IMG/VR virus record: IMGVR_UViG_3300049793_000366
Coordinates: 372,001 to 436,000 of that record
Strand: one strand, 5' to 3'
DNA: 64,000 bases
The notes beneath the pieces were generated by a model. It saw nothing but the letters and a program-made list of their open reading frames with translations. It was not told where the DNA came from and ran no database searches. Of the stretch, positions 3,103 to 48,001 are shown in pieces; positions within the stretch are counted from its first letter, which is position 1; each line of letters opens with the position of its first letter. The position numbers were made by a program, and so were the translations under genes.

Positions 3103-4446
3103 ATGAAGTGGCTTAAAGAAAGAGATAAATTTAGTATGAACGAATCAGTCGTGGTAAAACACAACATACCAACATATGATGAGTGCGTTGAAATGTGCGC
3201 TCAGGAATCACCATGTTTCTATGAGACTAAGCTGGTTTTAGATGGATATAATATATCTGTCTTTAACTATCGTCTTGCTATGTATAGCGATTTCGTTAAA
3301 CCAATCGCAGATAAGCCACAAATCAAAGCATATGAAATGAGAGGATTAACTTTCGTCTTCAATGAAGATGGAACAATCTTTAATCGTTTCCTTTTACTTG
3401 AGAAGTTCTTTAACTTAAATCAAGTTCCAGAGTCTATGTATTCTATTGTTAAGAACTACAAAATAAAGTATGTTAATAACAAAGAAGATGGTTCTATTGC
3501 TTCATTTATCAAATTACCGAATGGTAAAATATACGGTAAGTCAAAGATGTCATTTGATAATGACCAAGCTGATGGTATCAACAGAGTTTACAAAACTAAT
3601 AAGCAAATCAAATCACTTGTTGATTGGTGCTTAGATAACGATATCGCGCCTATTTTTGAATATGTTGCACCACATAATAGAATAGTTCTTAGATACACAA
3701 CTGAGGACTTAATATTATTGCGTCTAAGAGACAATAAGACTGGTAGGCACATTGACTTAAAGGATCATTTAGATAAGATTGGTGAGATTAAAATCGCACC
3801 ATTTGAAGATGATTTCGATGGTCTTGACCACCTAATTGAATTAGTTGCAAAGCAAACTGATAAAGAGGGTTGTATTGTACAAGCTGTTGACGAAAATGGT
3901 CACGACTTCTTATTTAAGCTTAAAACACCATGGTATTGTGAGAGACACGGTTTATTGACTGAGGACTTATACCGTGAGCATATTATTATTGGTTATATCT
4001 TACAAGACAAAATTGATGATATTCTTGGACAAATCCCAGAAGAAGAGAAAGAGGCGCACGAAAGAATCAATAAAATCATCAAGATAGCCAAAAAAGCTAT
4101 TGCTGATAAAGAAGCTGAAATACTTGGTTTCTATCAAGTTTATTTAGATATGAATGATAGAAAAGCATTTGCATTAAAGTATCACAGACACCCGTTATTT
4201 GCTATGACTATGGCTTATGTTAAAGGTGTATATATGAAAACTCTTTCAAAAGAAGAGATTGCTGAAATGTACGAAGGTGACTTTGACCGTTTCGCTATGA
4301 TTCTTAATCAGTGCGAATCATATGAAATAGCTAAAGAATGGCTTAGAGAACAAACTAAGTGGTTGATGATGGCAAGAGATTGGCTTCAAGACAAAGACCC
4401 TACTTTATTTTTCATAGATCCTATCGAAAGTGATGAAGATAACTAA
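3103..4446 (+). CDS. RNA ligase, T4 Rnl1-like
   Basis: Motif I KEDGS, FEYVAPHNRIV, EGCIV, FKLKTPWY. Confidence 0.85.
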   Translation: MKWLKERDKFSMNESVVVKHNIPTYDECVEMCAQESPCFYETKLVLDGYNISVFNYRLAMYSDFVKPIADKPQIKAYEMRGLTFVFNEDGTIFNRFLLLEKFFNLNQVPESMYSIVKNYKIKYVNNKEDGSIASFIKLPNGKIYGKSKMSFDNDQADGINRVYKTNKQIKSLVDWCLDNDIAPIFEYVAPHNRIVLRYTTEDLILLRLRDNKTGRHIDLKDHLDKIGEIKIAPFEDDFDGLDHLIELVAKQTDKEGCIVQAVDENGHDFLFKLKTPWYCERHGLLTEDLYREHIIIGYILQDKIDDILGQIPEEEKEAHERINKIIKIAKKAIADKEAEILGFYQVYLDMNDRKAFALKYHRHPLFAMTMAYVKGVYMKTLSKEEIAEMYEGDFDRFAMILNQCESYEIAKEWLREQTKWLMMARDWLQDKDPTLFFIDPIESDEDN

Positions 4447-4473
4447 CCCTGAACTAAAGTTCAGGGTTTTTTA
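4446..4473 (+). terminator. Intrinsic terminator
   Basis: aaccctgaac-taaa-gttcagggtt followed by a T tract. Confidence 0.8.
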
Positions 4474-6762: not shown

Positions 6763-6779
6763 AGTTTATATATTAAAAT

Positions 6780-15802: not shown

Positions 15803-15838
15803 AAAAAGAGCTATCATAATCATGGTAGCTCTTTTTTA
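15803..15838 (+). terminator. Intrinsic terminator
   Basis: aaaaagagctatca...tggtagctctttttt. Confidence 0.75.
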
Positions 15839-16116: not shown

Positions 16117-16179
16117 ATGACTATTAAAAGAATTAAATTAGCTGATGATTGCCTAACCTGTCTAACTGTGACGGATTAG
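16117..16179 (+). CDS. Asp leader peptide MTIKRIKLADDCLTCLTVTD
   Basis: Short ORF after AATATATA, tandem GAT GAT codons, directly before a terminator and aspS. Confidence 0.75.
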   Translation: MTIKRIKLADDCLTCLTVTD

Positions 16180-16236
16180 TAATCTATTGACTATATAATT
16201 CGAAACCCAGTTAGACACGTTCTAACTGGGTTTTTT
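16159..16236 (+). promoter_or_regulatory. Attenuator (antiterminator/terminator) of aspS
   Basis: Terminator aaacccagttaga/tctaactgggttt + T tract (16203-16236); leader tgtctaactg (16159-16168) is the exact complement of cagttagaca (16208-16217). Confidence 0.8.
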
Positions 16237-16278: not shown

Positions 16279-17556
16279 ATGAAAAGAACAAACATCAATG
16301 AACTGAATGCCCATGTAGGTGAGACAGTTCTAATTAAAGGTTGGGTATCACAATTTAGAAAATTAAGTAAGATATCCTTTATTATTCTACGCGAGAGAAC
16401 AGGATATTGTCAAGTGATAGTACCAAAAGAAGTATTTTTCGAAACAATACATTCTGAATCAGTAGTAGAAATAGTTGGTACGGTTAAAGCTGAACCACAA
16501 TCTAAGTATAACGGTCTTGAGATTGTAGTAGAGAAGATAACTATTGTATCAAGCGCAGAAGTATTACCATTCCCAATCAGTAGAGAAGAAGGTGTACCAT
16601 TCAATACACTAAACACTTATCGACCATTGACACTGAGAAAAGAACAAGAGCGATGTATATTTAAAATACAGTCTGAAATTATTTGGGCATATAGAGAATA
16701 TCTTCGTTCACAAGGCTTCACTGAAATACAATCTACAAAACTATCTGCCGCTGGTTTAGAAGGTGGTTCAGAAATGTTTGAGATAAACTATTTTGGAGAG
16801 AAGATGTATCTAACACAAAGCCCGCAGTTCTATAAACAGATGATGGTTGGTGTATATGAACGAGTGTTTGAAGTTGGTAAAGTTTACAGAGCAGAAGGTT
16901 CTAATACAAACAAGCACTTAACAGAATTTGTTGGGTTTGAATTTGAAATGGGATTCATTGAATCAGTTGAAGAAGTAATGCAAATGGAAGAGAATGTACT
17001 TGAACACATATTCAATCATTTGAATGTAGTTTGTAAGTCTGAGCTATCACATTTATCAATTGAGTTGAAGTTTAATCCAATACCAAGAGTTACTTATTCA
17101 GAAGCTATTGAAATAATTAAACGTGAACATGGTATCACTTATGAGAAAGTAGGACTGAGTACCGAAGCTGAGAGATTGATTGGTGAATATATTCTGAAGA
17201 CACAAGGTTCAGAGTTTGTATTCATCACTAAATATCCATTATCAGAAAGACCATTCTATGCGATGCCATCACCAGAAGAAGGTATGTCTGAAACATTTGA
17301 ATTGCTTTATAAGGGGATGGAAATTACTTCTGGTGGTCAGCGCATTCATAACTATGAACAATTAGTTAAATCAATAGAAGCTAAGGGATTAAACCCAGAA
17401 GCATTTGAGAGCTACCTAATGGCATTTAAGTATGGTATGCCTACTCACGGAGGTATGGGTATCGGTGTAGAGCGAGTGCTTAAGCAAATGCTAAATTTGA
17501 ATACCGCAGAGGAAGCATCATTGATACCAAGAACTAAAGAGAGATACAGTCATTAA
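16279..17556 (+). CDS. aspS: Aspartyl-tRNA synthetase, short archaeal-type
   Basis: OB-fold N-terminus, QSPQFYKQ, YRAE, EITSGGQRIH, GMPTHGGMGIGVER. QSPQ favours AspRS over AsnRS. Confidence 0.88.
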   Translation: MKRTNINELNAHVGETVLIKGWVSQFRKLSKISFIILRERTGYCQVIVPKEVFFETIHSESVVEIVGTVKAEPQSKYNGLEIVVEKITIVSSAEVLPFPISREEGVPFNTLNTYRPLTLRKEQERCIFKIQSEIIWAYREYLRSQGFTEIQSTKLSAAGLEGGSEMFEINYFGEKMYLTQSPQFYKQMMVGVYERVFEVGKVYRAEGSNTNKHLTEFVGFEFEMGFIESVEEVMQMEENVLEHIFNHLNVVCKSELSHLSIELKFNPIPRVTYSEAIEIIKREHGITYEKVGLSTEAERLIGEYILKTQGSEFVFITKYPLSERPFYAMPSPEEGMSETFELLYKGMEITSGGQRIHNYEQLVKSIEAKGLNPEAFESYLMAFKYGMPTHGGMGIGVERVLKQMLNLNTAEEASLIPRTKERYSH

Positions 17557-19612: not shown

Positions 19613-19690
19613 ATGAAAACATTAATAAACATACAAGTTCAACCCGATCCGCAAGTGTCGTCTGCTGGCTGTATGTTTCATATGAGTTGA
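19613..19690 (+). CDS. Gln/Val/Pro/Asp leader peptide MKTLINIQVQPDPQVSSAGCMFHMS
   Basis: Short ORF between promoter and terminator; core QVQPDPQV. Confidence 0.75.
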   Translation: MKTLINIQVQPDPQVSSAGCMFHMS

Positions 19691-19714
19691 AAATAACTAT
19701 TTCAAATAATATCG

Positions 19715-19749
19715 AAAACCCTCAGTTAGCAATGACTGAGGGTTTTTTT
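19715..19749 (+). terminator. Attenuator terminator before the Asp/Pro tRNA-proS operon
   Basis: aaaaccctcagt/actgagggtttt + T tract; leader tgctggctg can pair with cagttagca. Confidence 0.8.
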
Positions 19750-20139: not shown

Positions 20140-20142
20140 CAA

Positions 20143-20393
20143 GAAAGTAGATGAGGTCATAGTGAGAGTGTACACTACTGTTATCTGGATGATAGCACTT
20201 CTGTATTAAAAAGACTCCGCTCTGAGTGGTTAGGTACCGTGTAGTATCTTCGCGTGTTCTCTGCTCGACAAAAGCAATGCCCAGTTGAAAGACTGTAAAA
20301 AAGCTGAGTCAGTGTATAAAGGGGAACGGGATATTAAAAGGTGTTAAACCTAAACTAAGTGGCTACACCGCACGGCTCAGCTCTCTACACTTC
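20143..20393 (+). ncRNA. Unidentified structured RNA, about 250 nt, between tRNAs
   Basis: Terminal pairing GAAAGTAGATGAG/CTCTCTACACTTC; GCTGAGTC/GGCTCAGC; several local hairpins; no ORF. Confidence 0.55.
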
Positions 20394-20594: not shown

Positions 20595-20813
20595 ATGAAA
20601 GTAGTTTGTGTAAATAATGGAAAAGAAACTAGAAGCGTCAATAATGACGTTACGGTTAATGATGTGTATGATGTTATATATGAACACACATCAGATTATT
20701 ACTTAACTAATGATAATAAAAAGAGACTCATGTACCCCAAAGATATGTTTATTACTTTGGATGAATTTAAAAAAGAAATTAGAAATAAAAAATTATTAAA
20801 TATAGGGTTATGA
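20595..20813 (+). CDS. Small hypothetical protein (true start ATG 20595; the ORF-track start lies in tRNA-Pro)
   Basis: MKVVCVNN...RNKKLLNIGL. Confidence 0.55.
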   Translation: MKVVCVNNGKETRSVNNDVTVNDVYDVIYEHTSDYYLTNDNKKRLMYPKDMFITLDEFKKEIRNKKLLNIGL

Positions 20814-21916
20814 GATTATCAGAAACAAAAATTTATAATATGTCAAGAGTTGGGAAAGATATTCTCTCAACATCTGAGTTGCTTGAGAAAGCAGGCTACA
20901 TTAAACAAGTTCAATCAGGATTATTTGTTCAGATGAATTTAATGAAACGTGTAGTGAACAACATTGAACGAATTGTAAAAGAAGAACTTGAAAAAATAAG
21001 TTGCTTAGAGATTGGATTAAACCAATTACAGAGCGCAGAAATTTGGAAACAAACAGGAAGATACGAAACATACGGATCTGAAATGTTTAAGTTGAAAGAC
21101 CGTTCAGATAAAGAAATGGTATTCACTGGTACGAATGAAGAGCTTGTAACCTTAGTGGCTAAGAATTATGTGAAGTCATATAGAGATTTATCTTTTACAT
21201 TCTATCAGATAAATAATAAGTTCCGTGATGAGATTAGATGCAACACTGGATTGATTAGATGTAAAGAGTTCTCAATGATGGATGCGTATTCATTTCACGA
21301 ATCAAAAGAACACTTACAAGCTTACTATGATAAGATGAGAGAATGTTACGTTAGAATCTTTGACAGACTTGGTTTGAAATACAGAATAGAATCTACTGAC
21401 TCAGGTGAGATTGGTGGTTCAGTATCAGAAGAGTTTGTAGTAACAACAAGTGATGGTGAAATAGAAGTTGGTCACATCTTCCAATTAGATACAAAGTATT
21501 CATCTAAGATGGAAGCAAGATTTGATGATAGAGAAGGTAAGAGTCAAGACATTGTTATGGGTTGTTACGGAATAGGTATCACTCGATTAGCACAAGTGTT
21601 AGCTGATGTTGGTAGAAGTGGTAACAACTTTAACTTTAGTGATGAAGTATCTGCTTATAAGTATGGTGTTGTAATCGCGAATGTTAATGACGAGAAACAA
21701 AAAGAAATTGGAGAAAAGATATACAAAAATTTGGTAGCTCAAGGATTATCCGTATATTTGGATGACCGAAACATAAGAATAGGTGAAAAGCTAAATGAAA
21801 TAGATGCTCTCGGTATTGCGAATAAAATATTAGTAGGTAAAAACATTGAAGAAAATATTTACGAAAAGAAAAAACTTTCCAGTGAGAATTGGATAAAAGA
21901 AGAAATAACATTATAA
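20810..21916 (+). CDS. proS: Prolyl-tRNA synthetase lacking the INS editing domain
   Basis: FRDEIR..GLIRCKEF.MMDAYSF; GEIGGSVSEEF joins IEVGHIFQL almost directly; MGCYGIGITR; C-terminal anticodon-binding domain. Confidence 0.92.
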   Translation: MRLSETKIYNMSRVGKDILSTSELLEKAGYIKQVQSGLFVQMNLMKRVVNNIERIVKEELEKISCLEIGLNQLQSAEIWKQTGRYETYGSEMFKLKDRSDKEMVFTGTNEELVTLVAKNYVKSYRDLSFTFYQINNKFRDEIRCNTGLIRCKEFSMMDAYSFHESKEHLQAYYDKMRECYVRIFDRLGLKYRIESTDSGEIGGSVSEEFVVTTSDGEIEVGHIFQLDTKYSSKMEARFDDREGKSQDIVMGCYGIGITRLAQVLADVGRSGNNFNFSDEVSAYKYGVVIANVNDEKQKEIGEKIYKNLVAQGLSVYLDDRNIRIGEKLNEIDALGIANKILVGKNIEENIYEKKKLSSENWIKEEITL

Positions 21917-21927
21917 TATATACAGCT

Positions 21928-21999
21928 ATGAACAATTTAGTACAACAAGTCCAGCAACAACAAATCAATCTGATGATTGACTGGACTCGTATTGGCTAA
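21928..21999 (+). CDS. Gln leader peptide MNNLVQQVQQQQINLMIDWTRIG
   Basis: Six Gln codons (5 CAA, 1 CAG) ahead of a terminator, four tRNA-Gln genes and glnS. Confidence 0.88.
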   Translation: MNNLVQQVQQQQINLMIDWTRIG

Positions 22000-22022
22000 A
22001 ATGTAATTAGTTCCAAATTTCG

Positions 22023-22057
22023 AAAACCCGTTAATCTGTGTGATTAACGGGTTTTTT
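22023..22057 (+). terminator. Attenuator terminator of the Gln operon
   Basis: aaaacccgttaatc/gattaacgggtttt + T tract; leader gattgac pairs with gttaatc. Confidence 0.85.
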
Positions 22058-22070
22058 GTTTGCCTAAAAT

Positions 22071-22151
22071 TGTCTGGTGGTGAAATGGCAGCCACATCCG
22101 CCTTTGAAGCGGATGCCGAAAGGCGTGTAGGTTCGACCCCTACCCAGACAG
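22071..22151 (+). tRNA. tRNA-Gln(UUG) with a long variable arm (type II body)
   Basis: TGTCTGG/CCAGACA, G73, TCCGC-CTTTGAA-GCGGA, variable arm GCC-GAAA-GGC. Confidence 0.8.
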
Positions 22152-22157
22152 CAACAT

Positions 22158-22230
22158 TGCGGAATCGTCTAACGGTTAGGATAACACCCTCTGAAGGTGT
22201 CTGGTGTGGGTTCGAATCCTACTTCCGCAA
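22158..22230 (+). tRNA. tRNA-Gln(CUG)
   Basis: TGCGGAA/TTCCGCA, ACACC-CTCTGAA-GGTGT. Confidence 0.88.
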
Positions 22231-22235
22231 CAAAT

Positions 22236-22309
22236 TGTTCTATGGTGTAACTGGTTAACACGTCCGACTTTGACTCGGAAGACTCTAGGTTCGAATCCTA
22301 GTAGAACAG
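22236..22309 (+). tRNA. tRNA-Gln(UUG)
   Basis: TGTTCTA/TAGAACA, TCCGA-CTTTGAC-TCGGA. Confidence 0.9.
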
Positions 22310-22318
22310 CTAAAATAT

Positions 22319-22389
22319 TCCTCTTTGGTCTAATGGTATGACGTTGGGTTTTGGTCCCAAAGGTGGTGGTTCGATTCCATCAAGAGGGA
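22319..22389 (+). tRNA. tRNA-Gln(UUG)
   Basis: TCCTCTT/AAGAGGG, TTGGG-TTTTGGT-CCCAA. Confidence 0.88.
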
Positions 22390-22420
22390 CAACAAATAGT
22401 AATAATTAAATACAAACAAT

Positions 22421-24040
22421 ATGAATTTCATTGAAGACAAAATAACAGAAAGGGGAATAATTGAAAGTTTTAAACTTCGTTTTCCACCAGAAAATAATGG
22501 CTTTTTACATATCGGTCATGCGAAATCTATATGCCTTAACTTTGGTTTAGCTGAAAAATATAACAGACCATGTAATTTAAGATTCGATGATACTAATCCA
22601 TCAAATGAATCAAATGAATTCACAGAGGCTATTAAGAGAGACATAGCATGGTTGGGTTATAGACCAGCTAATATTCATCACACATCAGACTACTTCGCAT
22701 TCCTATATGATTGTGCTAAGACATTAATCAGAAAAGGATTAGCATACGTTGATGATTCAACATCAGAAGAGATTGCGGCACTTAAAGGTACAACAACTTT
22801 AGCTGGTAGACCATCGCCTTATTACTCAAGAACAATCGAAGAGAATCTTGATTTGTTCGAGAGAATGAAGAACGGTGAATTCAATGAAGGTTCTAAAATA
22901 TTAAGAGCTAAGATTGACATGGCTTCTCCTAATATGATTTTGAGAGATCCTGTTTTATATCGTATCATCAACAAGACACACCACCACGTTGGTGATGCTT
23001 GGAAGATTTATCCAATGTATGACTTCGCTCACCCATTGTCTGACTTCATTGAAGGTATCACTGATTCACTTTGCACTTTAGAGTTCGAAGTACACAGACC
23101 ATTATATATGTGGGTACTTGAGAATTGTGATTTGAATGGTACATTACCAGAAGAAACAGAGTTCGCTCGTTTGAACATTGACTACACAGTTATGTCAAAG
23201 AGAAAGCTTAAGAGATTAGTTGAAGAGGGATTTGTTTCTGGTTGGGATGATCCAAGACTTCCAACAATTTCAGGTTTGAGAAGAAGAGGATATACACCAG
23301 CATCTATTAAAGATTTCTGTGATAGAATTGGTGTTACTCGTAAAGAGTCTGTTGTATCACACTTGTTACTTGAAGAGTGTTTAAGAAATGATTTAAACAA
23401 AGTAGCTAATCGTGTGATGGGTATAATGGATCCTGTTAAGTTAGTTATTACCAATTGGGATAACGGTACTGAAATGGTTGAGATTGAAAACAACCCAGAA
23501 GATGAAAGTGCTGGTAAGAGAATGGTTCCATTCAGTGGTGAAATATACATTGAACGTGAAGACTTCAGAGAAGAAGCTGATAACAAGTTTTTCCGATTGA
23601 AGCCAGGTTGTGAAGTAAGATTGAAGGGTGCTTGTGTAATCATGGCTAATGAAATTATCAAAGATTCAAATGGTAACATCATTGAAATCAGATGTACTTA
23701 TGACCCTAACAGTCGGTCAGGTATGACACTTGATAGAAAAGTTAAGGGTACTATTCACTGGGTATCAGTTGAACACGCTATTAAAGGAGAAGTTAAAGAG
23801 TACAGTAACTTATTCAATGTGGCTAATCCTGATGAGTTAGAAGACTTCGTAGAAGGATTGAACAAAGAGTCATTGATAGTTAATACGAATGCTTACTTTG
23901 AACCAGAAGCTTTGAATTGTTCAATCGATAAGCCAGTTCAAATGGTAAGAAAAGGTTACTATGTGATGGATAAAGATTCAACAACTAATTGCTTGATTTT
24001 CAATAAAACAGTTAATTTAAAAGAAGACCGTAATAAATGA
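22421..24040 (+). CDS. glnS: Glutaminyl-tRNA synthetase
   Basis: RFPPENNGFLHIGHAK, RFDDTNP, VMSKRKL, VKGTIHWVS. Confidence 0.95.
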   Translation: MNFIEDKITERGIIESFKLRFPPENNGFLHIGHAKSICLNFGLAEKYNRPCNLRFDDTNPSNESNEFTEAIKRDIAWLGYRPANIHHTSDYFAFLYDCAKTLIRKGLAYVDDSTSEEIAALKGTTTLAGRPSPYYSRTIEENLDLFERMKNGEFNEGSKILRAKIDMASPNMILRDPVLYRIINKTHHHVGDAWKIYPMYDFAHPLSDFIEGITDSLCTLEFEVHRPLYMWVLENCDLNGTLPEETEFARLNIDYTVMSKRKLKRLVEEGFVSGWDDPRLPTISGLRRRGYTPASIKDFCDRIGVTRKESVVSHLLLEECLRNDLNKVANRVMGIMDPVKLVITNWDNGTEMVEIENNPEDESAGKRMVPFSGEIYIEREDFREEADNKFFRLKPGCEVRLKGACVIMANEIIKDSNGNIIEIRCTYDPNSRSGMTLDRKVKGTIHWVSVEHAIKGEVKEYSNLFNVANPDELEDFVEGLNKESLIVNTNAYFEPEALNCSIDKPVQMVRKGYYVMDKDSTTNCLIFNKTVNLKEDRNK

Positions 24041-24544: not shown

Positions 24545-24601
24545 ATGAAACACATTAACTCAAATAACGTAGTCGTAGTCAACAGGAATCCCGTCTGTTA
24601 G
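24545..24601 (+). CDS. Val leader peptide MKHINSNNVVVVNRNPVC
   Basis: Four consecutive Val codons (GTA GTC GTA GTC) ahead of a terminator and valS. Confidence 0.88.
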   Translation: MKHINSNNVVVVNRNPVC

Positions 24602-24623
24602 GCTACGCTATATCTATTATACT

Positions 24624-24655
24624 AACCCATCAGACAATCTCTGATGGGTTTTTTT
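24624..24655 (+). terminator. Attenuator terminator of valS
   Basis: aacccatcag/ctgatgggtt + T tract; leader gtctg pairs with cagac. Confidence 0.82.
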
Positions 24656-24694: not shown

Positions 24695-26224
24695 ATGAAA
24701 ACGAAATACACACCCGAAATTGAAAATGAAATCAACCAAGAATGGTTAGAAAATAAAACATACAAATCAACACCTGATGAGAGAGAAGCATTCACTATCA
24801 TCATGCCACCACCAAACATCACTGGTATACTTCACCTTGGACACATCTTGAATAACACAATACAAGATATTTTCATTAGAAGAAAGAAACAACTTGGTTA
24901 CAACACTTGTTGGATTCCTGGTATCGACCATGCTTCAATCGCAACAGAAGCTAAAATCATTCACTGGTTGAAAGAACAGAACATCGAGAAGAATGATCTG
25001 ACTAAAGAACAATTTCTTGAGTATGCTTGGCAATGGAAAGATAAATATGGTAACATAATCATCGACCAACTTAAACGATGTGGCTTTGCTTGTGATTGGG
25101 ATAGACTTACATTCACAATGGATAAACATCACTCTGATAGAATCTATGAAATGTATGACAGACTTAAAGCTGGCAACATCATATATCGCGGTACTAAAAC
25201 AATGGCTTATGACCCATTAGCTAAAACATACTTATCAGACTCGGAAACGTTTGAGAAGAATGGTAAACTATTCTCTGAGAGAACAGGCGCTAAGATTGAA
25301 ATGAAAGACACTGAGCAGATATTTATCGATATGAATAAGATTGCTCAACCCGCACTTGATAGTATCGGAGAACGCATTAAAATGATTCCTGATACAGCAT
25401 TCCCATCTTATAAGAATTGGTTTGATAACTTACAAGATTGGTGTATCTCAAGACAGTTAACATGGGGTCACTCTATACCAGATGATGAAGGAACTTTTGA
25501 TACTTGGTTCTCTTCTTGGTTATGTGCTATCACAGCATTTAAATCACAAGAAGAAATAGATTACTATATGCCATCAGACTTCATCATTACTGGTCAAGAC
25601 ATCGCTTTCTTTTGGATTGCTAAGATGATAATGGCGAATGATTACTGGGATAAATCTATACCGTTTCATAACATCTACTTCACTGGTATTATGAGAGATA
25701 AAGACGGTAAGAAGTTTGCGAAGCAGTTTAATAATTCACCAGACATTATGAATTTGATGGAAGAGCATGGCGCTGACTCATTGCGATTCTCAACTATCAT
25801 TAACCATCACGCTGGTATGGATTCTAAATGGACTATGGATCAATTGTTACAGGGTAAAAGATTCTGTAATAAGATTTGGAATATCAACAAGCTAATGTCT
25901 TCGTGGCAACCATCTGATATAGAAATGTCAGACAAACAAAGAGAATCATTGAATACTTGGAAGATGCAGTTTGCTTCTGCTAAGAATAGCTACAAGCAAC
26001 TATTTGATGATGAGCTTAGATTCTCAGAAGCTTTGATATTAACCTACAATCTTATTTGGGAAGACTTTTCATCTGGGTTACTTGAAGCCATAAAGCCTGA
26101 ACAGGGCATTTGGCCAAATTTAAACCGTGAGCTGTATGATTGTTTAATGAGTGATTTCAGAGAATTGATGCTAATGTTGGAGCCATTTATGCCATTCATA
26201 AGCAATTATATGTTGAATAAGTAA
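24695..26224 (+). CDS. valS: Valyl-tRNA synthetase, 509 aa, CP1 editing domain deleted
   Basis: PPPNITGILHLGH, PGIDHASIAT, DWCISRQLTWGH, FDTWFSS; KMSKS equivalent is KFAKQ. Confidence 0.9.
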   Translation: MKTKYTPEIENEINQEWLENKTYKSTPDEREAFTIIMPPPNITGILHLGHILNNTIQDIFIRRKKQLGYNTCWIPGIDHASIATEAKIIHWLKEQNIEKNDLTKEQFLEYAWQWKDKYGNIIIDQLKRCGFACDWDRLTFTMDKHHSDRIYEMYDRLKAGNIIYRGTKTMAYDPLAKTYLSDSETFEKNGKLFSERTGAKIEMKDTEQIFIDMNKIAQPALDSIGERIKMIPDTAFPSYKNWFDNLQDWCISRQLTWGHSIPDDEGTFDTWFSSWLCAITAFKSQEEIDYYMPSDFIITGQDIAFFWIAKMIMANDYWDKSIPFHNIYFTGIMRDKDGKKFAKQFNNSPDIMNLMEEHGADSLRFSTIINHHAGMDSKWTMDQLLQGKRFCNKIWNINKLMSSWQPSDIEMSDKQRESLNTWKMQFASAKNSYKQLFDDELRFSEALILTYNLIWEDFSSGLLEAIKPEQGIWPNLNRELYDCLMSDFRELMLMLEPFMPFISNYMLNK

Positions 26225-26234
26225 TATATAGAGT

Positions 26235-35256: not shown

Positions 35257-35361
35257 ATGTTAGTTATCAGTTCACATAAACATTTTAGTAAATCTAATAA
35301 GTGGTTTAGCCACTCTGGTTCGTGCTATGGCGTTTGTGTAAACTCTACTACAATGATGTAA
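35257..35361 (+). CDS. His/Lys/Phe/Trp/Ser leader peptide MLVISSHKHFSKSNKWFSHSGSCYGVCVNSTTMM
   Basis: Core HKHFSKSNKWFSHS ahead of a terminator and the His/Lys/Trp/Phe/Ser tRNA array. Confidence 0.8.
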   Translation: MLVISSHKHFSKSNKWFSHSGSCYGVCVNSTTMM

Positions 35362-35383
35362 AGAATTTAAATCACAATACTCG

Positions 35384-35416
35384 AAGCTCGAACCGTAAAA
35401 AGTTCGAGCTTTTTTT
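35384..35416 (+). terminator. Attenuator terminator
   Basis: aagctcgaac/gttcgagctt + T tract; leader tggttcgtgct pairs with agctcgaaccg. Confidence 0.82.
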
Positions 35417-35697: not shown

Positions 35698-35771
35698 TGA
35701 GGGGTAGCTCAGTGGTAAGAGCGCCGGGACGGAAAACCCGGAGGTCGTTGGTTCGAATCTAACCCCCTCTA
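35698..35771 (+). tRNA. Initiator-like tRNA body with an 8-nt anticodon loop ACGGAAAA
   Basis: U1-U72 mismatch, GAGGGG/CCCCTC, CCGGG/CCCGG stem, AGGTC variable loop. Confidence 0.6.
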
Positions 35772-35779
35772 CAAAGAAT

Positions 35780-36131: not shown

Positions 36132-36698
36132 ATGAAACGCATTTTATATATGAAAGAGGAAATATTAAAACTAAGGAGCGAAGGCAAAACATTCAATGAG
36201 ATTAAAACAATATTGAACTGTTCAAAATCTACAATATCATATTATTGTAGTGATGGACAAAAAGAAAAAACTATAAAAAGAACAAAAAAAAGAAGAGAAA
36301 ATTTAATACTTAGTAAACTTGAAAAATTCAAAAGCAGAAAAATAAAAAATACTAAAGAATCTGTTAGAAAATTTCAAAAAAGAGATAATGATATAAAGAA
36401 GAGAGGTAAAGTAAATAACAATTTAAATACTACATTTAGCTGGACTGACGTTATTGAAAAATTTGGTGAAAATACTAATTGTTATTTATCTGGTGAGAAA
36501 ATAAATTTATATGAAAAAGGTTATAGCTTTGACCATATAATACCAGTAAGCTTGGGTGGAGATAATAGCTTAGATAACCTTGGTGTATCAAACGAAAAGG
36601 TTAATAGAATGAAAACTGATATGATACCAGATGAATTTATAAACTGGTGTAGAAAAATATTAGAATTCAATGGATATAAAGTTGAAAAATTCAATTAA
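36132..36698 (+). mobile_element. Free-standing HNH homing endonuclease with N-terminal HTH
   Basis: CYLSGE...SFDHIIPVSLGGDNSLDNL...N.MK; inserted in a tRNA array. Confidence 0.82.
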
Positions 36699-36699
36699 A

Positions 36700-36738
36700 A
36701 TGAAAACAATGAAAACTGAAATAAAACGAAAACGATAG
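36700..36738 (+). CDS. Lys-rich mini-ORF MKTMKTEIKRKR
   Basis: ATG..TAG directly abutting a hairpin before tRNA-Lys. Confidence 0.5.
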   Translation: MKTMKTEIKRKR

Positions 36739-36767
36739 TTCCGTAGTTGAATGCTACGGACGAATAT

Positions 36768-36870: not shown

Positions 36871-36903
36871 ATGAAAACTATAAAACGAAAATATAAACGG
36901 TAA
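36871..36903 (+). CDS. Lys-rich mini-ORF MKTIKRKYKR
   Basis: ATG..TAA directly abutting a hairpin before tRNA-Lys. Confidence 0.5.
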   Translation: MKTIKRKYKR

Positions 36904-36937
36904 GACGTGGTTCGCCTTGAGCTACGTCACCGAAAAT

Positions 36938-37098: not shown

Positions 37099-37121
37099 CT
37101 AAACTAAAAAAGAAAGTGCAA

Positions 37122-38324
37122 ATGGAAACAGTAAATTGTAGAATACTAAACAGAAGACTTCACGGAAAGTCTGCGTTCTTAGATGTGTTAGCGAATGGTC
37201 AACATTTACAAACATATCTTAACATAAATGAAGTTGAGAACTTCACTGAGTTGACAGAATTACCAATAGGTTCTTTCATTAGAATTAACGGGGAATACTT
37301 CACAACCAGAACTGGTCACTACACGTTGAGAATAGATAATGCTCATGTATTATTTATACCTAACAGAATACTACCAGTAGTTCAAGACGATGGTGAGAAT
37401 AGATTCAATGAAGTAACAAACGTTGAATCTATTAGAAGAAGAAGATACCTTCAAACGATATTGAATGCTGAGGAAAGGCAAACATTCGTTACAAGGTCAA
37501 GAGTTATAAATACAATAAGGAATTTCTTTATACAAAGAGATTACTTAGAAGTAGAAACTCCAATCTTACAACCAGTTTACGGTGGTGCTGAAGCTACACC
37601 ATTCGTAACAAGATTCGAATCACTTGATTCAGACTTCTATCTAAGGATAGCACCTGAATTATATTTGAGAAGAATGATAATTGGTGGGTATGATAGGGTG
37701 TTTGAGATTGGTAGAAACTTTAGAAATGAAGGACTATCTAACAGACATAACCCGGAGTTTACTTTCATTGAGGTGTATACCGCATTTGAAAATTATAACT
37801 TTAGTATGGATGTAGTAACTGAATTGTTTACAGAAATATTCAATCAGTTCGGTGAAGTTGAGTATCAGGGTAACAGAATTAATTTCTCTAACATAGAGAG
37901 AAGAAGTTACACTGAGTTAGTAGCTCAACACTGTAATGTTGATACCACAACATTAACAGATAATGAATTGGTAGCGTTGTTTGAAAATGAAGTTGAAGGT
38001 AATTTAATTAACCCAACTATTGTATATGATTACCCAGCTAGTGTAAGTCCTTTAGCGCAAGTTAGAGAAGATAACCCAAGCATAGCTGAACGTTTTGAAA
38101 TATATGTTGGTGGAATGGAAATTGGAAATGCATACTCTGAGTTGAACGATGTGAATAGACACATCGAGAACATTGGAACAGAAGATGCAGACTTCGTAGA
38201 GGCACTCGAATATGGAATGCCACCTACAACAGGAATAGGACTCGGTATAGATAGAATTGTAATGATTCTTACAAACCGAGCAATAAGAGACGTTATATTC
38301 TTCCCAGCGATGAGAAGAGCATAA
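37122..38324 (+). CDS. lysS: Lysyl-tRNA synthetase class II, shortened
   Basis: YGGAEATPF, YLRIAPELYL, FRNEG..RHNPEF, RFEIYVGGMEIGNAYSELND, YGMPPTTGIGLGIDR. Confidence 0.93.
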   Translation: METVNCRILNRRLHGKSAFLDVLANGQHLQTYLNINEVENFTELTELPIGSFIRINGEYFTTRTGHYTLRIDNAHVLFIPNRILPVVQDDGENRFNEVTNVESIRRRRYLQTILNAEERQTFVTRSRVINTIRNFFIQRDYLEVETPILQPVYGGAEATPFVTRFESLDSDFYLRIAPELYLRRMIIGGYDRVFEIGRNFRNEGLSNRHNPEFTFIEVYTAFENYNFSMDVVTELFTEIFNQFGEVEYQGNRINFSNIERRSYTELVAQHCNVDTTTLTDNELVALFENEVEGNLINPTIVYDYPASVSPLAQVREDNPSIAERFEIYVGGMEIGNAYSELNDVNRHIENIGTEDADFVEALEYGMPPTTGIGLGIDRIVMILTNRAIRDVIFFPAMRRA

Positions 38325-40150: not shown

Positions 40151-40219
40151 ATGAAAACAACAATGACAATAACAATTTCTCGCTCGCGTTCATCGCGTTC
40201 ACTACCTCTGGTGGTCTGA
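40151..40219 (+). CDS. Ser/Arg leader peptide MKTTMTITISRSRSSRSLPLVV
   Basis: SRSRSSRS core; all Ser codons TCN, all Arg codons CGY. Confidence 0.85.
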   Translation: MKTTMTITISRSRSSRSLPLVV

Positions 40220-40246
40220 GATTGTATTGTCTAATAAATAATACTT

Positions 40247-40278
40247 AACCCTTGGACTTCACTGTTCAAGGGTTTTTT
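40247..40278 (+). terminator. Attenuator terminator
   Basis: aacccttgga/ttcaagggtt + T tract; leader-end ggtctgag pairs with cttggact. Confidence 0.8.
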
Positions 40279-43055: not shown

Positions 43056-43124
43056 ATGAAAACATTAAACATCAATACTCATTTTCACTTTCACTTCGAA
43101 AACCTCGAACTGGGAGTCCATTGA
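43056..43124 (+). CDS. His/Phe leader peptide MKTLNINTHFHFHFENLELGVH
   Basis: HFHFHF directly before a terminator, hisS and pheS. Confidence 0.9.
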   Translation: MKTLNINTHFHFHFENLELGVH

Positions 43125-43151
43125 TATTGATATAACTATATAATCATTATG

Positions 43152-43179
43152 AAGCCCAGACGAGAATCTGGGCTTTTTT
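43152..43179 (+). terminator. Attenuator terminator of hisS-pheS
   Basis: aagcccaga/tctgggctt + T tract; leader ctcgaactggg pairs with cccagacgag. Confidence 0.85.
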
Positions 43180-43216: not shown

Positions 43217-43852
43217 ATGGAAATTAAATTAGAATCAACTTACAAAGGAACAAGAATACTATTCGCTGAAACTGCGAAAACAAAAAGAACAATCATTAAC
43301 AAGATGATTGAAATACTTGAATCATATGGCTATCAAGAAATGATGATACCAATTATTCAAAAGCAAGATACTTTTAAATCTAAAGTAGGTGCTGAAAACC
43401 AAAAGATGATGTACACCTTCAAAGATATGGGTGACAGAGATTTGTGTTTAGCACCAGAGTATACCGCGGTTATTCAACAACTTGCTAAAGAAAAGTTTAA
43501 ATTCAACAAAGATGTTAAGCTATTTTATGTAGCTGAGTGTTTCAGAGGTGAGAACACACAAGCTGGTCGATTTAGACAGTTCACTCAATTTGGTGTTGAG
43601 GTGATAAACCCAAGAGAAGACTACTCTGATGAAATGTTAGAGATAGCAAAAAAGTTAATTGAAATATGTACTGATAACTATGAAGTGAATACTGACGCGA
43701 CCAGAGGCTTAGACTACTATAAAGGTGGTAAGGGCTTCGAGATTGGTTGCCCAGAGTTGGGATCCTCTAAGCAAGTATGTGGTGGTGGTTCTTATGAAGG
43801 TGGTATCGGATTCGCTATCGGTGTTGACCGAATACTAATACTTAAAAAATAA
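43217..43852 (+). CDS. hisS: Histidyl-tRNA synthetase, catalytic domain only (211 aa)
   Basis: LCLAPEYT, FRGENTQAGRFRQFTQFGVE, RGLDYY, GGGSY, GFAIGVDR, then stop. Confidence 0.88.
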   Translation: MEIKLESTYKGTRILFAETAKTKRTIINKMIEILESYGYQEMMIPIIQKQDTFKSKVGAENQKMMYTFKDMGDRDLCLAPEYTAVIQQLAKEKFKFNKDVKLFYVAECFRGENTQAGRFRQFTQFGVEVINPREDYSDEMLEIAKKLIEICTDNYEVNTDATRGLDYYKGGKGFEIGCPELGSSKQVCGGGSYEGGIGFAIGVDRILILKK

Positions 43853-43860: not shown

Positions 43861-44961
43861 ATGAAATATTTAAATAAAGAAGAAATAGAAAAAACTCTTT
43901 CTCTTAAAGACTTAACAGAAGATACACATCACGCCATCGGTATGATGGTAAGTGAAATAAAAAATGCTTTAGAATCCAAATATGGATTAGAAGCTAATGA
44001 AATAAGAACATCACCTATTGTTGATGTTAAAGATAACTATGATAGATTGTATTATCCACAAGACACGATTACCAAATCAAGTAGGTATACTCGTTGGATT
44101 GATGATAATACAATTCTACGTACACAAATGACTGCTTGTATACCAAATGCTTTGAGTAAGTTAAATACAAATGATTCTCTCATGTTGTGTCCTGGTATGG
44201 TATATCGTCGTGATGTTGTAGATAAAACTCACGTTGGTGAACCGCATCAAATGGATGTATGGCGAGTAACAAAAGACAAAGTGTATAACAGGCAGGATCT
44301 ACTTGAATTGGTAGAAACTATTATAAATGTTGTATTACCTGGTGTTCAGTGGCGCTATAATGAAACTTCGCACTACTACACCAAAGATGGTATTGAAGTA
44401 GAAGTTTATGTAAATGATAACTGGTTAGAGATTCTTGAGTGTGGTTTAGCTCTACCTGAGCTTTTAAGCGACTCTGGGTTAAATCCTGATACTTGGTCAG
44501 GCTTAGCGTTAGGAATTGGCTTAGATAGAGCTGTAATGCTTAGAAAGGGTATAGCTGATATTCGGATATTAAGAAGTGATAATCCGAAAATATCTAAGCA
44601 AATGTCCACATTATTAAATTATATTTCCGTATCTTCACAACCACAAATAAAAAGAGACTTATCGATTGCGGTTGATAGTGATGTTAATAATGAAGATTTG
44701 GGTGATATTATACGAAATTTGATGGGTGATGAAGTAAAAATCATCGAACAAGTGGTTATTATATCTGAAACCAAATATGAAGATTTATTAGAACACGTAA
44801 GAGAAAGACTTGGTATGACTGACAATATGAAAAATATACTACTTAGAGTTATAATATGCCCTCTCGATAAAGCTATGACTAAGACTGAAGCTAATGAGAT
44901 TTATACTCATTTATATAGTAAATTACATCAGGGAAATATTGGGTACACAATTAATATATAG
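43861..44961 (+). CDS. pheS: Monomeric phenylalanyl-tRNA synthetase (alpha catalytic domain fused to anticodon-binding FDX-ACB domain)
   Basis: LRTQMT, YRRDVVDKTH...HQMD, WLEILECG, ALGIGLDRAVML..GIADIR; C-terminal RDLSIAV. Confidence 0.88.
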   Translation: MKYLNKEEIEKTLSLKDLTEDTHHAIGMMVSEIKNALESKYGLEANEIRTSPIVDVKDNYDRLYYPQDTITKSSRYTRWIDDNTILRTQMTACIPNALSKLNTNDSLMLCPGMVYRRDVVDKTHVGEPHQMDVWRVTKDKVYNRQDLLELVETIINVVLPGVQWRYNETSHYYTKDGIEVEVYVNDNWLEILECGLALPELLSDSGLNPDTWSGLALGIGLDRAVMLRKGIADIRILRSDNPKISKQMSTLLNYISVSSQPQIKRDLSIAVDSDVNNEDLGDIIRNLMGDEVKIIEQVVIISETKYEDLLEHVRERLGMTDNMKNILLRVIICPLDKAMTKTEANEIYTHLYSKLHQGNIGYTINI

Positions 44962-47436: not shown

Positions 47437-47532
47437 ATGAACACTTTAATCTACATAGGGTATATAGCGGAAGGCGGTTATGAAGCGGGGAGCTTCGTGA
47501 ATGGCTTGGTTTTACCTATGCGTAAAGTGTGA
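47437..47532 (+). CDS. Tyr/Ile/Gly/Ala/Glu leader peptide MNTLIYIGYIAEGGYEAGSFVNGLVLPMRKV
   Basis: Core YIGYIAEGGYEAG with two ATA codons. Confidence 0.85.
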   Translation: MNTLIYIGYIAEGGYEAGSFVNGLVLPMRKV

Positions 47533-47558
47533 TGATATAAACATACTTAACAAATTCG

Positions 47559-47590
47559 AAACCCAGTCATTCAAATGACTGGGTTTTTTT
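47559..47590 (+). terminator. Attenuator terminator
   Basis: aaacccagtcatt/aatgactgggttt + T tract; leader tgaatggcttggttt (47498-47512) pairs with aaacccagtcattca. Confidence 0.85.
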
Positions 47591-47600: not shown

Positions 47601-47673
47601 GGTCCTATCGGCAAGTTGGTTAAGCCGCCACCCTTTCAAGGTGGAGTCACGGGTTCAAGTCCCGTTGGGACTA
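47601..47673 (+). tRNA. tRNA-Glu(UUC)
   Basis: CCACC-CTTTCAA-GGTGG. Confidence 0.92.
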
Positions 47674-47688
47674 CAAAAGATAATAGAT

Positions 47689-47762
47689 GGTCCGTTCGTC
47701 TATGCGGTCTAGGACATCGCCCTTTCACGGCGAGAACACGGGTTCGAATCCCGTACGGATCA
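47689..47762 (+). tRNA. tRNA-Glu(UUC)
   Basis: TCGCC-CTTTCAC-GGCGA. Confidence 0.92.
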
Positions 47763-47830
47763 CGAAGCAATTAAGCGCGGGAGGTTGCGCCTCCGATGAT
47801 AGAGATATCAGGGTTTTCTACCGCGTATAT

Positions 47831-47902
47831 GTTCTTATCGACTAAGGGTTAGGTCACCATCCTCTCAAGATGGAGATACGGGTTCGAATCCCGTTGAGAA
47901 TA
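47831..47902 (+). tRNA. tRNA-Glu(CUC)
   Basis: CCATC-CTCTCAA-GATGG. Confidence 0.88.
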
Positions 47903-47907
47903 CAAAT

Positions 47908-47989
47908 GGGTCAGTCGTCTAGCGGCAATGGCTGGAGACTGTAAATCTCCTCTCTTCGGAGTTCGTAGGTTCGAGTCCTACCTGGCCCA
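47908..47989 (+). tRNA. tRNA-Tyr(GUA)
   Basis: GGAGA-CTGTAAA-TCTCC, variable arm. Confidence 0.92.
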
Positions 47990-48001
47990 CACGAATAAAA
48001 T

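What the first reader, a model, noticed from the sequence alone, without database searches (positions are those of the whole stretch)
21928..24040. Gln attenuator heading four tRNA-Gln genes and glnS
Six Gln codons (5 CAA, 1 CAG) mirror three UUG and one CUG tRNA-Gln. The 1:2 helix agtccag/ctggact covers the Gln run; gattgac/gttaatc is the 2:3 antiterminator; 22023-22057 is the terminator. It is a textbook architecture, but here it gates a tRNA array.
Basis: partly seen in the sequence, partly recalled or inferred. Interest (0 to 1): 0.8.

Follow-up and report, generated by a model that had tools for sequence, protein, structure and literature searches.

The report
Codon-matched attenuators gating phage tRNA arrays
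A huge phage puts a tiny glutamine-rich test gene and a stop signal in front of its glutamine tRNA genes and glutaminyl-tRNA synthetase. It is one of at least eight such codon-matched switches in this window, so the phage probably makes each tRNA set only when that tRNA runs short.

Summary
A 23-codon ORF (21928-21999) with six Gln codons is followed by a 15-bp hairpin plus T6 (22022-22057). Fourteen nt later come four tRNA-Gln genes and then glnS. The proposed 1:2, 2:3 and 3:4 helices all exist.

The attenuator reading is supported by comparison:
- 21 distinct versions of this Gln leader sit before tRNA-Gln arrays in related huge phages (Mahaphage-like, Bacteroidetes hosts).
- Phage glnS loci without tRNA-Gln lack the leader, and about 55 bacterial-type glnS loci lack it too.
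- The outer 1:2 helix covaries. The antiterminator beats shuffles in 18 of 21 versions, although the window's own copy is the weakest.

The bigger result is that this is one of at least eight modules in the window. Each has a mini-ORF whose codons name the downstream tRNAs or synthetase: SRSRSSRS before Ser/Arg tRNAs, IYIGYIAEGGYEAG before Glu/Tyr/Gly/Ile/Ala, HFHFHF before HisRS plus a PheRS-like gene, VVVV before ValRS. The true leader-to-target pairing is the single best of 40,320 permutations, in this window and again in a relative (1 of 5,040 in a second relative).

The mechanism is classical. Using it on tRNA arrays, and as a genome-wide amino-acid "barcode", appears undescribed. The claim that the CAA/CAG ratio mirrors the tRNA anticodons is not supported. 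There is no experimental evidence.

The parts
21914..21922 (+). TAATATATA box 5 nt upstream of the leader ATG. It overlaps the proS stop codon. Likely a gene-start signal: a promoter -10-like element or a translation-initiation element.
   Evidence: 22 copies in the window against 3.2 expected. Most lie 0-7 nt upstream of start codons of real genes and of five of the eight leaders.
21928..21999 (+). Gln leader ORF of 23 codons with core QQVQQQQ. Gln codons at 21943-48 and 21952-63.
   Evidence: Homologous Gln-run mini-ORFs in 21 phage loci.
21948..21987 (+). Protector (1:2) structure. Outer helix 21948-54 with 21981-87; inner helix 21965-70 with 21975-80. The Gln codons lie in the internal loop.
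   Evidence: MFE structures. This region is -19.9 kcal/mol, z -3.6. The outer helix covaries in relatives.
21974..21985 (+). Region 2, the upstream strand of the antiterminator. It pairs with 22026-22037 in the terminator's 5' arm.
   Evidence: Best duplex -9.9 kcal/mol. It is the MFE structure (-13.2) when a ribosome is placed on Gln codons 2-6.
22022..22057 (+). Intrinsic terminator: 15-bp stem, 5-nt loop, T6. It ends 14 nt before the first tRNA.
   Evidence: -19.9 kcal/mol. There is no room for a promoter between it and the tRNA.
22071..22390 (+). Four tRNA-Gln genes (UUG, CUG, UUG, UUG). The first is 82 nt and has a long variable arm.
   Evidence: ARAGORN and Rfam.
22421..24040 (+). glnS, glutaminyl-tRNA synthetase. 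No terminator lies between it and the tRNAs.
   Evidence: Pfam PF00749, PF03950, PF20974; terminator scan.
16117..16234 (+). Sister module: leader with three Asp codons plus terminator, before AspRS (16279-17556).
19613..19747 (+). Sister module: leader core QVQPDPQV plus terminator, before tRNA-Asp x3, Glu, Pro x2 and proS.
   Evidence: The homologous core NPQPQ..DQDP occurs in 8 phages.
24545..24650 (+). Sister module: leader core VVVV plus terminator, before ValRS (24695-26224). It lies in series downstream of glnS.
35257..35412 (+). Sister module: leader core HKHFSKSNKWFSH plus terminator, before the tRNA His/Lys/Trp/Phe array.
   Evidence: Homologues in LR745206 and LR756502.
40151..40274 (+). 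Sister module: leader core SRSRSSRS, all UCN and CGN codons, plus terminator. It precedes a tRNA Ser/Arg/Ser/Ser/Arg/Ser array and SerRS.
43056..43176 (+). Sister module: leader core HFHFHF plus terminator, before a HisRS fragment and a PheS-related ligase.
   Evidence: In LR745206 the PheS-related gene stands alone and its leader core is FNFFF.
47437..47587 (+). Sister module: leader core IYIGYIAEGGYEAG plus terminator, before the tRNA Glu/Tyr/Gly/Ile/Ala array (47601-49312).
   Evidence: Relatives have this split into two arrays, each with its own matching leader.

Best explanation
This is a ribosome-mediated (leader-peptide) transcription attenuator. It makes expression of the phage's four tRNA-Gln genes and glnS depend on how fast ribosomes can read Gln codons, that is, on the supply of Gln-tRNA(Gln) in the infected cell.

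Shown by sequence and comparison:
- a short ORF with a Gln-codon run;
- a protector hairpin (1:2) that holds the Gln codons in its internal loop and sequesters region 2;
- an intrinsic terminator (3:4) placed 14 nt before the first tRNA;
- a region 2 that can instead pair with the terminator's 5' arm.

Inferred steps:
- When Gln-tRNA is plentiful, the ribosome runs over region 2 to the stop codon or leaves. The 1:2 structure or the ribosome then keeps region 2 busy, the terminator forms, and a roughly 130-nt RNA is released.
- When Gln-tRNA is scarce, the ribosome stalls on 21943-21963 and covers the 5' strands of the protector. Region 2 pairs with 22026-37, the terminator cannot nucleate, and RNA polymerase reads into the tRNA array and glnS.

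The module is one member of a phage-wide family in which each leader's codons spell the identities of the tRNAs or synthetase behind it. Together these would give demand-driven, amino-acid-by-amino-acid control of the phage's own translation kit. Modules lie in series on one strand: Pro/Asp leader, then Gln leader, then Val leader. Upstream leaders also carry codons for downstream modules, which suggests nested gating (a post hoc observation).
For: Anatomy in the window:
- All parts are present.
- The leader folds at z -6.0.
- Constraint folding gives protector plus terminator without a ribosome, the antiterminator as MFE with a ribosome on Gln codons 2-6, and a free terminator arm with the ribosome at the stop.

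Conservation:
- 21 distinct Gln leaders occur in viral and metagenome contigs, each directly before a tRNA-Gln array.
- Four phage glnS loci without tRNA-Gln (L012, L029, L037, L039) lack the leader, and about 55 bacterial-type glnS loci lack it.
- A pattern scan of 185,579 species genomes gave only chance hits.

Structure:
- The antiterminator has median z -3.5 and p<0.05 in 18 of 21 versions.
- Unrelated sequences keep the same pairing logic: L009 GGUUCCGG with CCUGGAAC, L023 AGUAGCU with AGCUGCU.
- The protector is conserved with compensatory changes.
- In most relatives the stop codon lies inside region 2.

Family-level evidence:
- Eight modules in the window. The true leader-to-target pairing is the unique best of 40,320 permutations, 56 cognate residues against a mean of 19.
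- The same holds in LR745206.1 (1 of 40,320) and LR756502.1 (1 of 5,040).
- Leaders track array content across phages: one merged array with one merged leader here, two arrays with two leaders in the relatives. The core is HFHFHF with HisRS plus PheRS-like, and FNFFF with PheRS-like alone.
- Identities guessed from the leader before the family scan were right: IIII to IleRS, NNRN to AsnRS, LLL to LeuRS, DD to AspRS. The window's VVVV leader likewise matches ValRS.
- Arg codons in the Ser/Arg leader are all CGN, matching tRNA-Arg GCG and ACG, although CGN is only 25% of Arg codons in the genome.
- 21 of 22 modules have a significant antiterminator. Own-versus-other terminator pairing is beaten or matched by only 10 of 40,320 permutations.
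Against: - There is no transcript, ribosome or genetic data for any of these phages.
- The window's own antiterminator is weak: -9.9 to -13.2 against -19.9 kcal/mol for the terminator. It is not significant alone (p 0.08-0.15) and is not specific against other modules' terminator arms (rank 4 of 8).
- A 1-nt frame difference makes the window's ORF end 12 nt past region 2 (stop 21997-99). A ribosome at the stop would cover only the last few nt of region 2. The model then relies on refolding of 1:2.
- Translation of the mini-ORF is inferred from its context. There is no Shine-Dalgarno sequence, which is expected for Bacteroidetes-type systems.
- It is unknown which RNA polymerase reads this region, and whether it obeys intrinsic terminators and is coupled to ribosomes.
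- Imperfect cases: tRNA-Glu in the Asp/Glu/Pro array has no Glu codon in its leader. A HisRS leader in LR745206 has a single His codon. The three tRNA-Lys after the HNH gene have only hairpins without a T-run.
Confidence: 0.8

Rival explanations
1. The hairpin at 22022-22057 is just the terminator of the upstream proS operon, the small ORF is fortuitous, and the tRNA-Gln array has its own promoter.
For: The hairpin lies about 105 nt after the proS stop. Ordinary gene-end terminators of the same style exist in the window at 4445-4468 and 15803-15836.
Against: - Only 14 nt separate the T-run from the first tRNA here, and 4-7 nt in most relatives, which leaves no room for a promoter.
- In relatives the same leader plus terminator follows tRNA genes, not proS.
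- The Gln run is conserved in 21 versions and is absent where tRNA-Gln is absent.
- The permutation tests on codon matching argue strongly against chance.
Confidence: 0.04
2. The Gln mini-ORF is a real sensor but does not act through the 2:3 antiterminator. Ribosome stalling might instead alter Rho access, RNase processing of the leader-tRNA precursor, or polymerase pausing.
For: The window's 2:3 helix is weak and non-specific. The precursor must be processed by RNase P/E just after the terminator. A conserved GTATTGTCTAAA element after the ORF has no assigned role.
Against: - Antiterminator complementarity is significant in 18 of 21 Gln leaders and 21 of 22 modules of all types.
- It is maintained with unrelated sequences.
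- Region 2 always lies in or at the end of the ORF, as the classical model needs.
Confidence: 0.1
3. The mini-ORFs encode functional micropeptides, or the terminated leader RNAs act as trans-acting small RNAs. On this view their position before tRNAs is secondary.
For: Attenuator-derived sRNAs and leader peptides with trans functions are known in Sinorhizobium (rnTrpL and peTrpL; PMC6614838 and PMC7298713, listed).
Against: Peptide sequences are conserved only in the cognate-codon run and in the nucleotides that form helices. Their composition changes with the downstream genes. A trans role would add to attenuation rather than replace it.
Confidence: 0.03

Closest known systems
Leader-peptide attenuators of amino-acid biosynthetic operons (trpL, hisL, pheL, leuL, thrL, ilvL of enterobacteria; textbook knowledge)
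   Same: Short ORF with a run of regulatory codons, 1:2 / 2:3 / 3:4 alternative hairpins, an intrinsic terminator, and readout of charged-tRNA supply by ribosome speed. Multi-amino-acid leaders also have precedent: thr senses Thr plus Ile, and ilv senses Ile, Leu and Val.
   Different: - The targets are tRNA genes and aminoacyl-tRNA synthetases, not biosynthetic enzymes.
- The host is a phage genome.
- Leaders encode up to five or more amino-acid identities matched one-to-one to a tRNA array.
- Many modules occur per genome, arranged in series.
- There is no sequence relation to these families: Rfam Trp_leader scores 18 bits against a threshold of 41.
Leader-peptide attenuators of synthetase genes: E. 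coli pheST (pheM leader; own knowledge) and the His leader before hisS paralogues in bacilli (PMC2965389)
   Same: A synthetase gene is placed behind a cognate-codon leader ORF and a terminator. The window's AspRS, ValRS and HisRS/PheRS-like modules are of this type.
   Different: Here the first regulated genes are tRNAs and glnS comes after them. I found no described Gln leader and no described case upstream of tRNA genes in seven literature searches.
T-box riboswitches
   Same: They control synthetase genes by sensing tRNA charging and switch between terminator and antiterminator.
   Different: T-boxes bind uncharged tRNA directly through a specifier codon and the T-box sequence, without translation. 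There is no T-box match here, and an ORF is present.
tRNA arrays and synthetases of huge phages (Al-Shayeb et al. 2020, PMC7162821)
   Same: Same clade (relatives LR745206.1 and LR756502.1, 634 and 642 kb, Mahaphage, predicted Bacteroidetes hosts) and the same gene content.
   Different: That paper lists the tRNAs and synthetases but says nothing about their regulation. The words attenuat* and leader do not occur in its main text.

Membership tests
Ribosome-mediated (leader-peptide) transcription attenuator | Short translatable ORF enriched in codons of the regulatory amino acid | tested here: met
   6 Gln in 22 codons against a 2.8% background, P = 2e-5. It carries the same TAATATATA start context as real genes.
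Ribosome-mediated (leader-peptide) transcription attenuator | Intrinsic terminator between the leader ORF and the first regulated gene, with no intervening promoter | tested here: met
   15-bp stem plus T6 at 22022-22057, 14 nt before tRNA-Gln.
Ribosome-mediated (leader-peptide) transcription attenuator | Antiterminator that uses the terminator's 5' arm and excludes the terminator | tested here: inconclusive
   Present in the window (-9.9 kcal/mol; MFE of the stalled state) but not significant on its own (p 0.08-0.15). At family level it is met: 18 of 21 Gln leaders and 21 of 22 modules.
Ribosome-mediated (leader-peptide) transcription attenuator | Regulatory codons placed so that a stalled ribosome masks region 1 but leaves region 2 free. 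A ribosome finishing the ORF, or a free region 1, neutralises region 2. | tested here: met
   Constraint folding. The last Gln codon ends 10 nt before region 2. In most relatives the stop codon lies inside region 2.
Ribosome-mediated (leader-peptide) transcription attenuator | Regulated genes functionally tied to the sensed amino acid | tested here: met
   Four tRNA-Gln genes and GlnRS. The same match holds in 8 of 8 window modules by permutation test.
Ribosome-mediated (leader-peptide) transcription attenuator | Read-through increases when the cognate charged tRNA is limiting | not testable with these tools
   Needs in vitro transcription-translation or infected-cell RNA.
Rfam leader families (Trp_leader, His_leader, Leu_leader, Thr_leader and others) | Covariance-model score at or above the gathering threshold | tested here: not met
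   No hit at the gathering threshold in the window. The best hit is Trp_leader at 18.3 bits against 41.
T-box riboswitch | Stem I with specifier loop and the conserved T-box sequence (RF00230 match) | tested here: not met
   No T-box hit at the gathering threshold or at E-value up to 10.

The most novel reading that the evidence does not exclude
Huge Bacteroidetes phages run their whole imported translation kit through a network of amino-acid-barcoded attenuators. Each tRNA array and synthetase gene would be transcribed only when ribosomes stall on the very codons that array decodes. Modules are nested in series, so upstream leaders also carry downstream identities. This would be a codon-resolved, demand-driven tRNA supply circuit. 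It could also serve as an inducible answer to host tRNA depletion, whether from codon-usage mismatch, host shut-off or tRNA-cleaving defence nucleases. As a by-product, leader composition predicts the specificity of unassigned synthetase-like genes, for example Phe for the 'PheS-related mystery ligase SrmL'.
Probability: 0.55. Interest if true: 0.92.

Novelty: new variant of a known kind. Interest (0 to 1): 0.85.

Why it matters
- tRNA genes are normally regarded as growth-rate or constitutively controlled. Phage tRNA arrays are discussed only in terms of which tRNAs they carry.
- A sensor that reads the shortage of a specific charged tRNA and answers by making that tRNA and its synthetase would be a new regulatory logic for tRNA genes.
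- It would also be a new layer in how giant phages take over translation.
- It yields testable predictions for uncultured phages from sequence alone: which codons limit translation, which arrays are co-regulated, and what an unknown ligase charges.
- It offers compact, orthogonal, amino-acid-specific switches for synthetic biology.
- It gives a simple rule (leader composition equals downstream tRNA identities) for annotating such elements in metagenomes.

Tried and rejected
- Rfam at gathering and permissive thresholds gave no leader or T-box family.
- The codon/anticodon 'mirror' (CAA:CAG against UUG:CUG) was tested across 21 loci and rejected.
- The search for related loci with SerRS and LysRS returned only the window's own contig. 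tblastn of SerRS found no close relative in the phage collection. The Ser/Arg and His/Lys modules were therefore compared through LR745206 and LR756502 regions located by tRNA similarity.
- The MAFFT alignment A1 puts variable-length terminator stems out of register. I therefore did not run alignment-based pair counting. I used per-sequence duplex and fold tests against dinucleotide shuffles, plus a cross-module permutation.
- The exact-pattern scan of 185,579 species genomes gave 24 hits, all chance, with no tRNA or terminator nearby. Two of eight viral-contig hits were also chance.
- The Lys-rich mini-ORFs at 36700-36738 and 36871-36903 before tRNA-Lys genes are followed by hairpins without a T-run. 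I did not count them as modules.
- Seven literature searches and two papers read gave no prior description. The library lacks most subscription journals, so absence is not proof.
Full report
**What the window is.** The 64-kb window is part of a 507,910-bp viral contig, IMGVR_UViG_3300049793_000366 (100% match). Its closest GenBank relatives are the 634-kb and 642-kb uncultured phages LR745206.1 and LR756502.1. Al-Shayeb et al. 2020 placed these in the 'Mahaphage' clade with predicted Bacteroidetes hosts (PMC7162821). The window carries 39 tRNA genes in arrays. It also carries synthetase genes for Asp, Pro, Gln, Val, Lys, Ser, a HisRS fragment and a PheS-related ligase.

**Checking the observation.**
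- The ORF runs from 21928 to 21999 (23 codons) and has Gln codons CAA CAA (21943-48) and CAG CAA CAA CAA (21952-63).
- AGTCCAG (21948-54) pairs with CTGGACT (21981-87). GATTGAC (21975-81) can pair with GTTAATC (22030-36).
- A 15-bp hairpin at 22022-22056 runs into T6 at 22052-57.
- The tool's own terminator scan missed this hairpin because the A-run/T-run pairing consumes the T tail. My scan with explicit rules finds it.
- Fourteen nt later the four tRNA-Gln genes begin, followed by glnS with no terminator in between.
The Gln codons sit in the internal loop between the two helices.
- The leader folds far better than shuffles (-45.2 kcal/mol, z -6.0).
- Gln enrichment has P = 2e-5 against the window's proteome. 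Gln-dense stretches occur at only five places in all six frames.

**Conservation of the Gln module.**
- Using GlnRS as a handle in viral and metagenome contigs, plus a DNA pattern, I collected 21 distinct versions. Each has a Gln-run mini-ORF (4-7 Gln), a hairpin with T-run, and then a tRNA-Gln array, usually 4-7 nt later.
- Every phage-type glnS locus with a tRNA-Gln array and enough upstream sequence has the leader.
- Four phage-type loci without tRNA-Gln (L012, L029, L037, L039) lack it. About 55 bacterial-type glnS loci (54-60% identity) have neither tRNA-Gln nor a leader.
- In several phages another gene separates the array from glnS. The leader is therefore tied to the tRNA array rather than to glnS.
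- A scan of 185,579 species genomes for the leader's core pattern gave only chance hits.

**Structure in the family.**
- The protector is conserved as an outer helix, then an unpaired Gln run, then an inner hairpin.
- The outer helix shows compensatory change: AGTCCAG/CTGGACT in the window, ATACCA/TGGTAT in most relatives, ATTCCA/TGGAAT in L013.
- Region 2 (…GATTGA…TGG…) is complementary both to region 1 and to the terminator's 5' arm (…ACC…TCAATC…).
- The best duplex between the post-Gln segment and the 5' arm has median z -3.5 against dinucleotide shuffles, with p<0.05 in 18 of 21 versions.
- Divergent leaders use quite different sequences for the same pairing (L009, L023, L024, L034).
- In most versions the stop codon TGA lies inside region 2, so a ribosome that finishes the ORF sits on the antiterminator strand.
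- The window differs by a 1-nt frame change that moves the stop 12 nt beyond region 2. Its antiterminator is the weakest of the set (p 0.08-0.15).
- Constraint folding of the window's leader still gives the three textbook states:
  - With no ribosome, the protector forms and then the terminator.
  - With a ribosome on any of Gln codons 2-6, the antiterminator (-13.2 kcal/mol) is the MFE of the nascent RNA.
  - With a ribosome at the stop, the inner hairpin holds region 2 and the terminator arm is free.

**The wider finding.** The Gln element is one of a family. Of the 11 plus-strand hairpin/T-run terminators in the window, eight are preceded by a mini-ORF and followed within about 60 nt by a tRNA array or a synthetase gene. 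The leader cores and their targets are:

| Leader core | Downstream target |
|---|---|
| three Asp codons (..ADD...D) | AspRS |
| QVQPDPQV | tRNA-Asp x3, Glu, Pro x2, ProRS (then the Gln and Val modules) |
| QQVQQQQ | tRNA-Gln x4, GlnRS |
| VVVV | ValRS |
| HKHFSKSNKWFSH | tRNA His, Lys, Trp, Phe |
| SRSRSSRS | tRNA Ser, Arg, Ser, Ser, Arg, Ser, then SerRS |
| HFHFHF | HisRS fragment plus PheS-related ligase |
| IYIGYIAEGGYEAG | tRNA Glu, Tyr, Gly, Ile, Ala |

- Counting leader residues that belong to the downstream identities, the true assignment is the single best of all 40,320 permutations, 56 against a mean of 19.
- The same test on modules found in LR745206.1 and LR756502.1 gives 1 of 40,320 and 1 of 5,040.
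- At codon level, the three Arg codons of the Ser/Arg leader are all CGN, matching tRNA-Arg(GCG) and tRNA-Arg(ACG). CGN is 25% of Arg codons in the window's genes.

**Leaders track content across phages.**
- The relatives have separate Glu/Tyr and Ile/Gly/Ala arrays, each with its own leader (cores SYESYYEE and ISIAVIGNGAGAI). The window has one merged array and one merged leader.
- The PheS-related gene stands alone in LR745206.1 behind an FNFFF leader. In the window it follows a HisRS fragment behind HFHFHF.
- For the synthetase genes of the relatives I guessed the specificity from the leader before running the family scan, and the guesses were right: IIII to IleRS, NNRN to AsnRS, NNNVNILLL to LeuRS, DD…D to AspRS twice.
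- One case is weak: a HisRS-fragment leader in LR745206 with a single His codon.
- Across 22 modules of all types, 21 show a better-than-shuffle antiterminator whose upstream strand lies within or at the end of the ORF.
- In the window, own-leader/own-terminator pairing is matched by only 10 of 40,320 permutations.

**Mechanism and its limits.** The best explanation is classical ribosome-mediated attenuation applied to tRNA arrays and synthetase genes. It reads charged-tRNA supply codon by codon.
- The tRNAs cannot have their own promoters, because the gaps after the terminators are 4-31 nt. Their expression must therefore depend on terminator read-through.
- Modules are chained on one strand without intervening terminators (proS, then Gln leader; glnS and ORF168, then Val leader).
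- The first leader of the chain contains Gln and Val codons as well as Pro and Asp. Its homologues in eight phages share the core NPQPQ..DQDP, and two of them have a tRNA-Gln inside the Pro/Asp array. This suggests nested gating but is a post hoc reading.
- What is inferred rather than shown: that the mini-ORFs are translated, which polymerase transcribes them, that transcription and translation are coupled, and the actual response to tRNA limitation.
- The signal could be amino-acid starvation, tRNA shortage or tRNA cleavage. The sequence cannot tell these apart.

**Comparison with what is known.**
- The architecture is that of trp/his/phe/thr/ilv leaders, and multivalent leaders are known for thr and ilv.
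- Synthetase genes behind leader peptides are known: pheST in E. coli, and a His leader before hisS paralogues in bacilli (PMC2965389).
- The element matches no Rfam family and is not a T-box.
- I found no description of leader-peptide attenuators in front of tRNA genes, of a Gln leader, or of such elements in phages. This rests on seven full-text searches and on the paper describing these phages. The library is incomplete, so this is absence of evidence.
- I therefore class it as a new variant of a known kind. The mechanism is known. The targets are new, and so is the systematic amino-acid barcode.

**Verdict.** The finding is considerably broader than reported. Confidence in the attenuator mechanism is about 0.8, and interest is 0.85.

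Noticed in passing
window 60855-61269 (+), and 61277-61350: Full-length GOLLD RNA (RF02032, 232 bits, E 1e-64), followed directly by a tRNA-like element (RF00005, 39.9 bits) and then a hairpin/T-run terminator at 61529-61560.
   Followed up: no
window, 22 sites (e.g. 6767-6775 minus strand, 26222-26230, 44952-44960, 51793-51801): TAATATATA occurs 22 times against 3.2 expected. Most copies lie 0-7 nt upstream of start codons of long ORFs and of five of the eight leaders, including inside tight operon junctions. It could be a phage promoter giving near-leaderless mRNAs, or a translation-start element. A Bacteroidetes-type TAnnTTTG motif and an AAAGGGAG motif lie further upstream of several leaders (read by eye, not tested).
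   Followed up: partly
window 22071-22152; also L001 3001-3082, L002 2944-3028, L006 3823-3905: One tRNA-Gln(UUG) per array is 82-90 nt long with a long variable arm (class II-like shape), which is unusual for tRNA-Gln. It is conserved in several related phages.
   Followed up: partly
window 35698-35772: tRNA with an 8-nt anticodon loop (ARAGORN 'Ser|Phe, GGAA') inside the His/Lys/Trp/Phe array; Rfam tRNA score 53.6 bits. It may be a four-base decoder or an expanded-loop Phe tRNA. tRNAs with irregular anticodon loops (ARAGORN '???': gtag in L001, gt in L006, ttga in L026) also occur in relatives.
   Followed up: no
window 36132-36698, 36700-36761, 36871-36930: An HNH endonuclease ORF with an HTH domain sits inside the tRNA region and splits the Lys tRNAs from the His/Lys/Trp/Phe array; relatives have one continuous array. 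After it, two Lys/Arg-rich mini-ORFs are each followed by a hairpin without a T-run before tRNA-Lys genes. Their meaning is unclear.
   Followed up: partly
window 43217-43852, 43861-44961, 24695-26224, 20810-21916, 37116-38324: The phage synthetases are minimised. HisRS is only a 211-aa N-terminal fragment, the same length as in LR745206. ValRS is 509 aa, ProRS 368 aa and LysRS 402 aa, all well short of their family models. The gene matching NCBIfam 'PheS-related mystery ligase SrmL' sits behind Phe-rich leaders, which suggests it handles phenylalanine.
   Followed up: partly
window 20141-20392: A 253-nt spacer between tRNA-Glu and tRNA-Pro folds strongly (-68 kcal/mol) and has no ORF, tRNA or Rfam call. 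In L002 the equivalent stretch looks like decayed tRNA copies.
   Followed up: no
A1 columns 67-79 (window 21989-22001); L001 about 2740-2752 and other Gln leaders: A conserved GTATTGTCTAAA element lies between the leader stop and the terminator (GTATTGGCTAAA in the window). A similar TATTGTC recurs at the junction of T-run and tRNA. No role has been assigned; it might be a processing signal.
   Followed up: no
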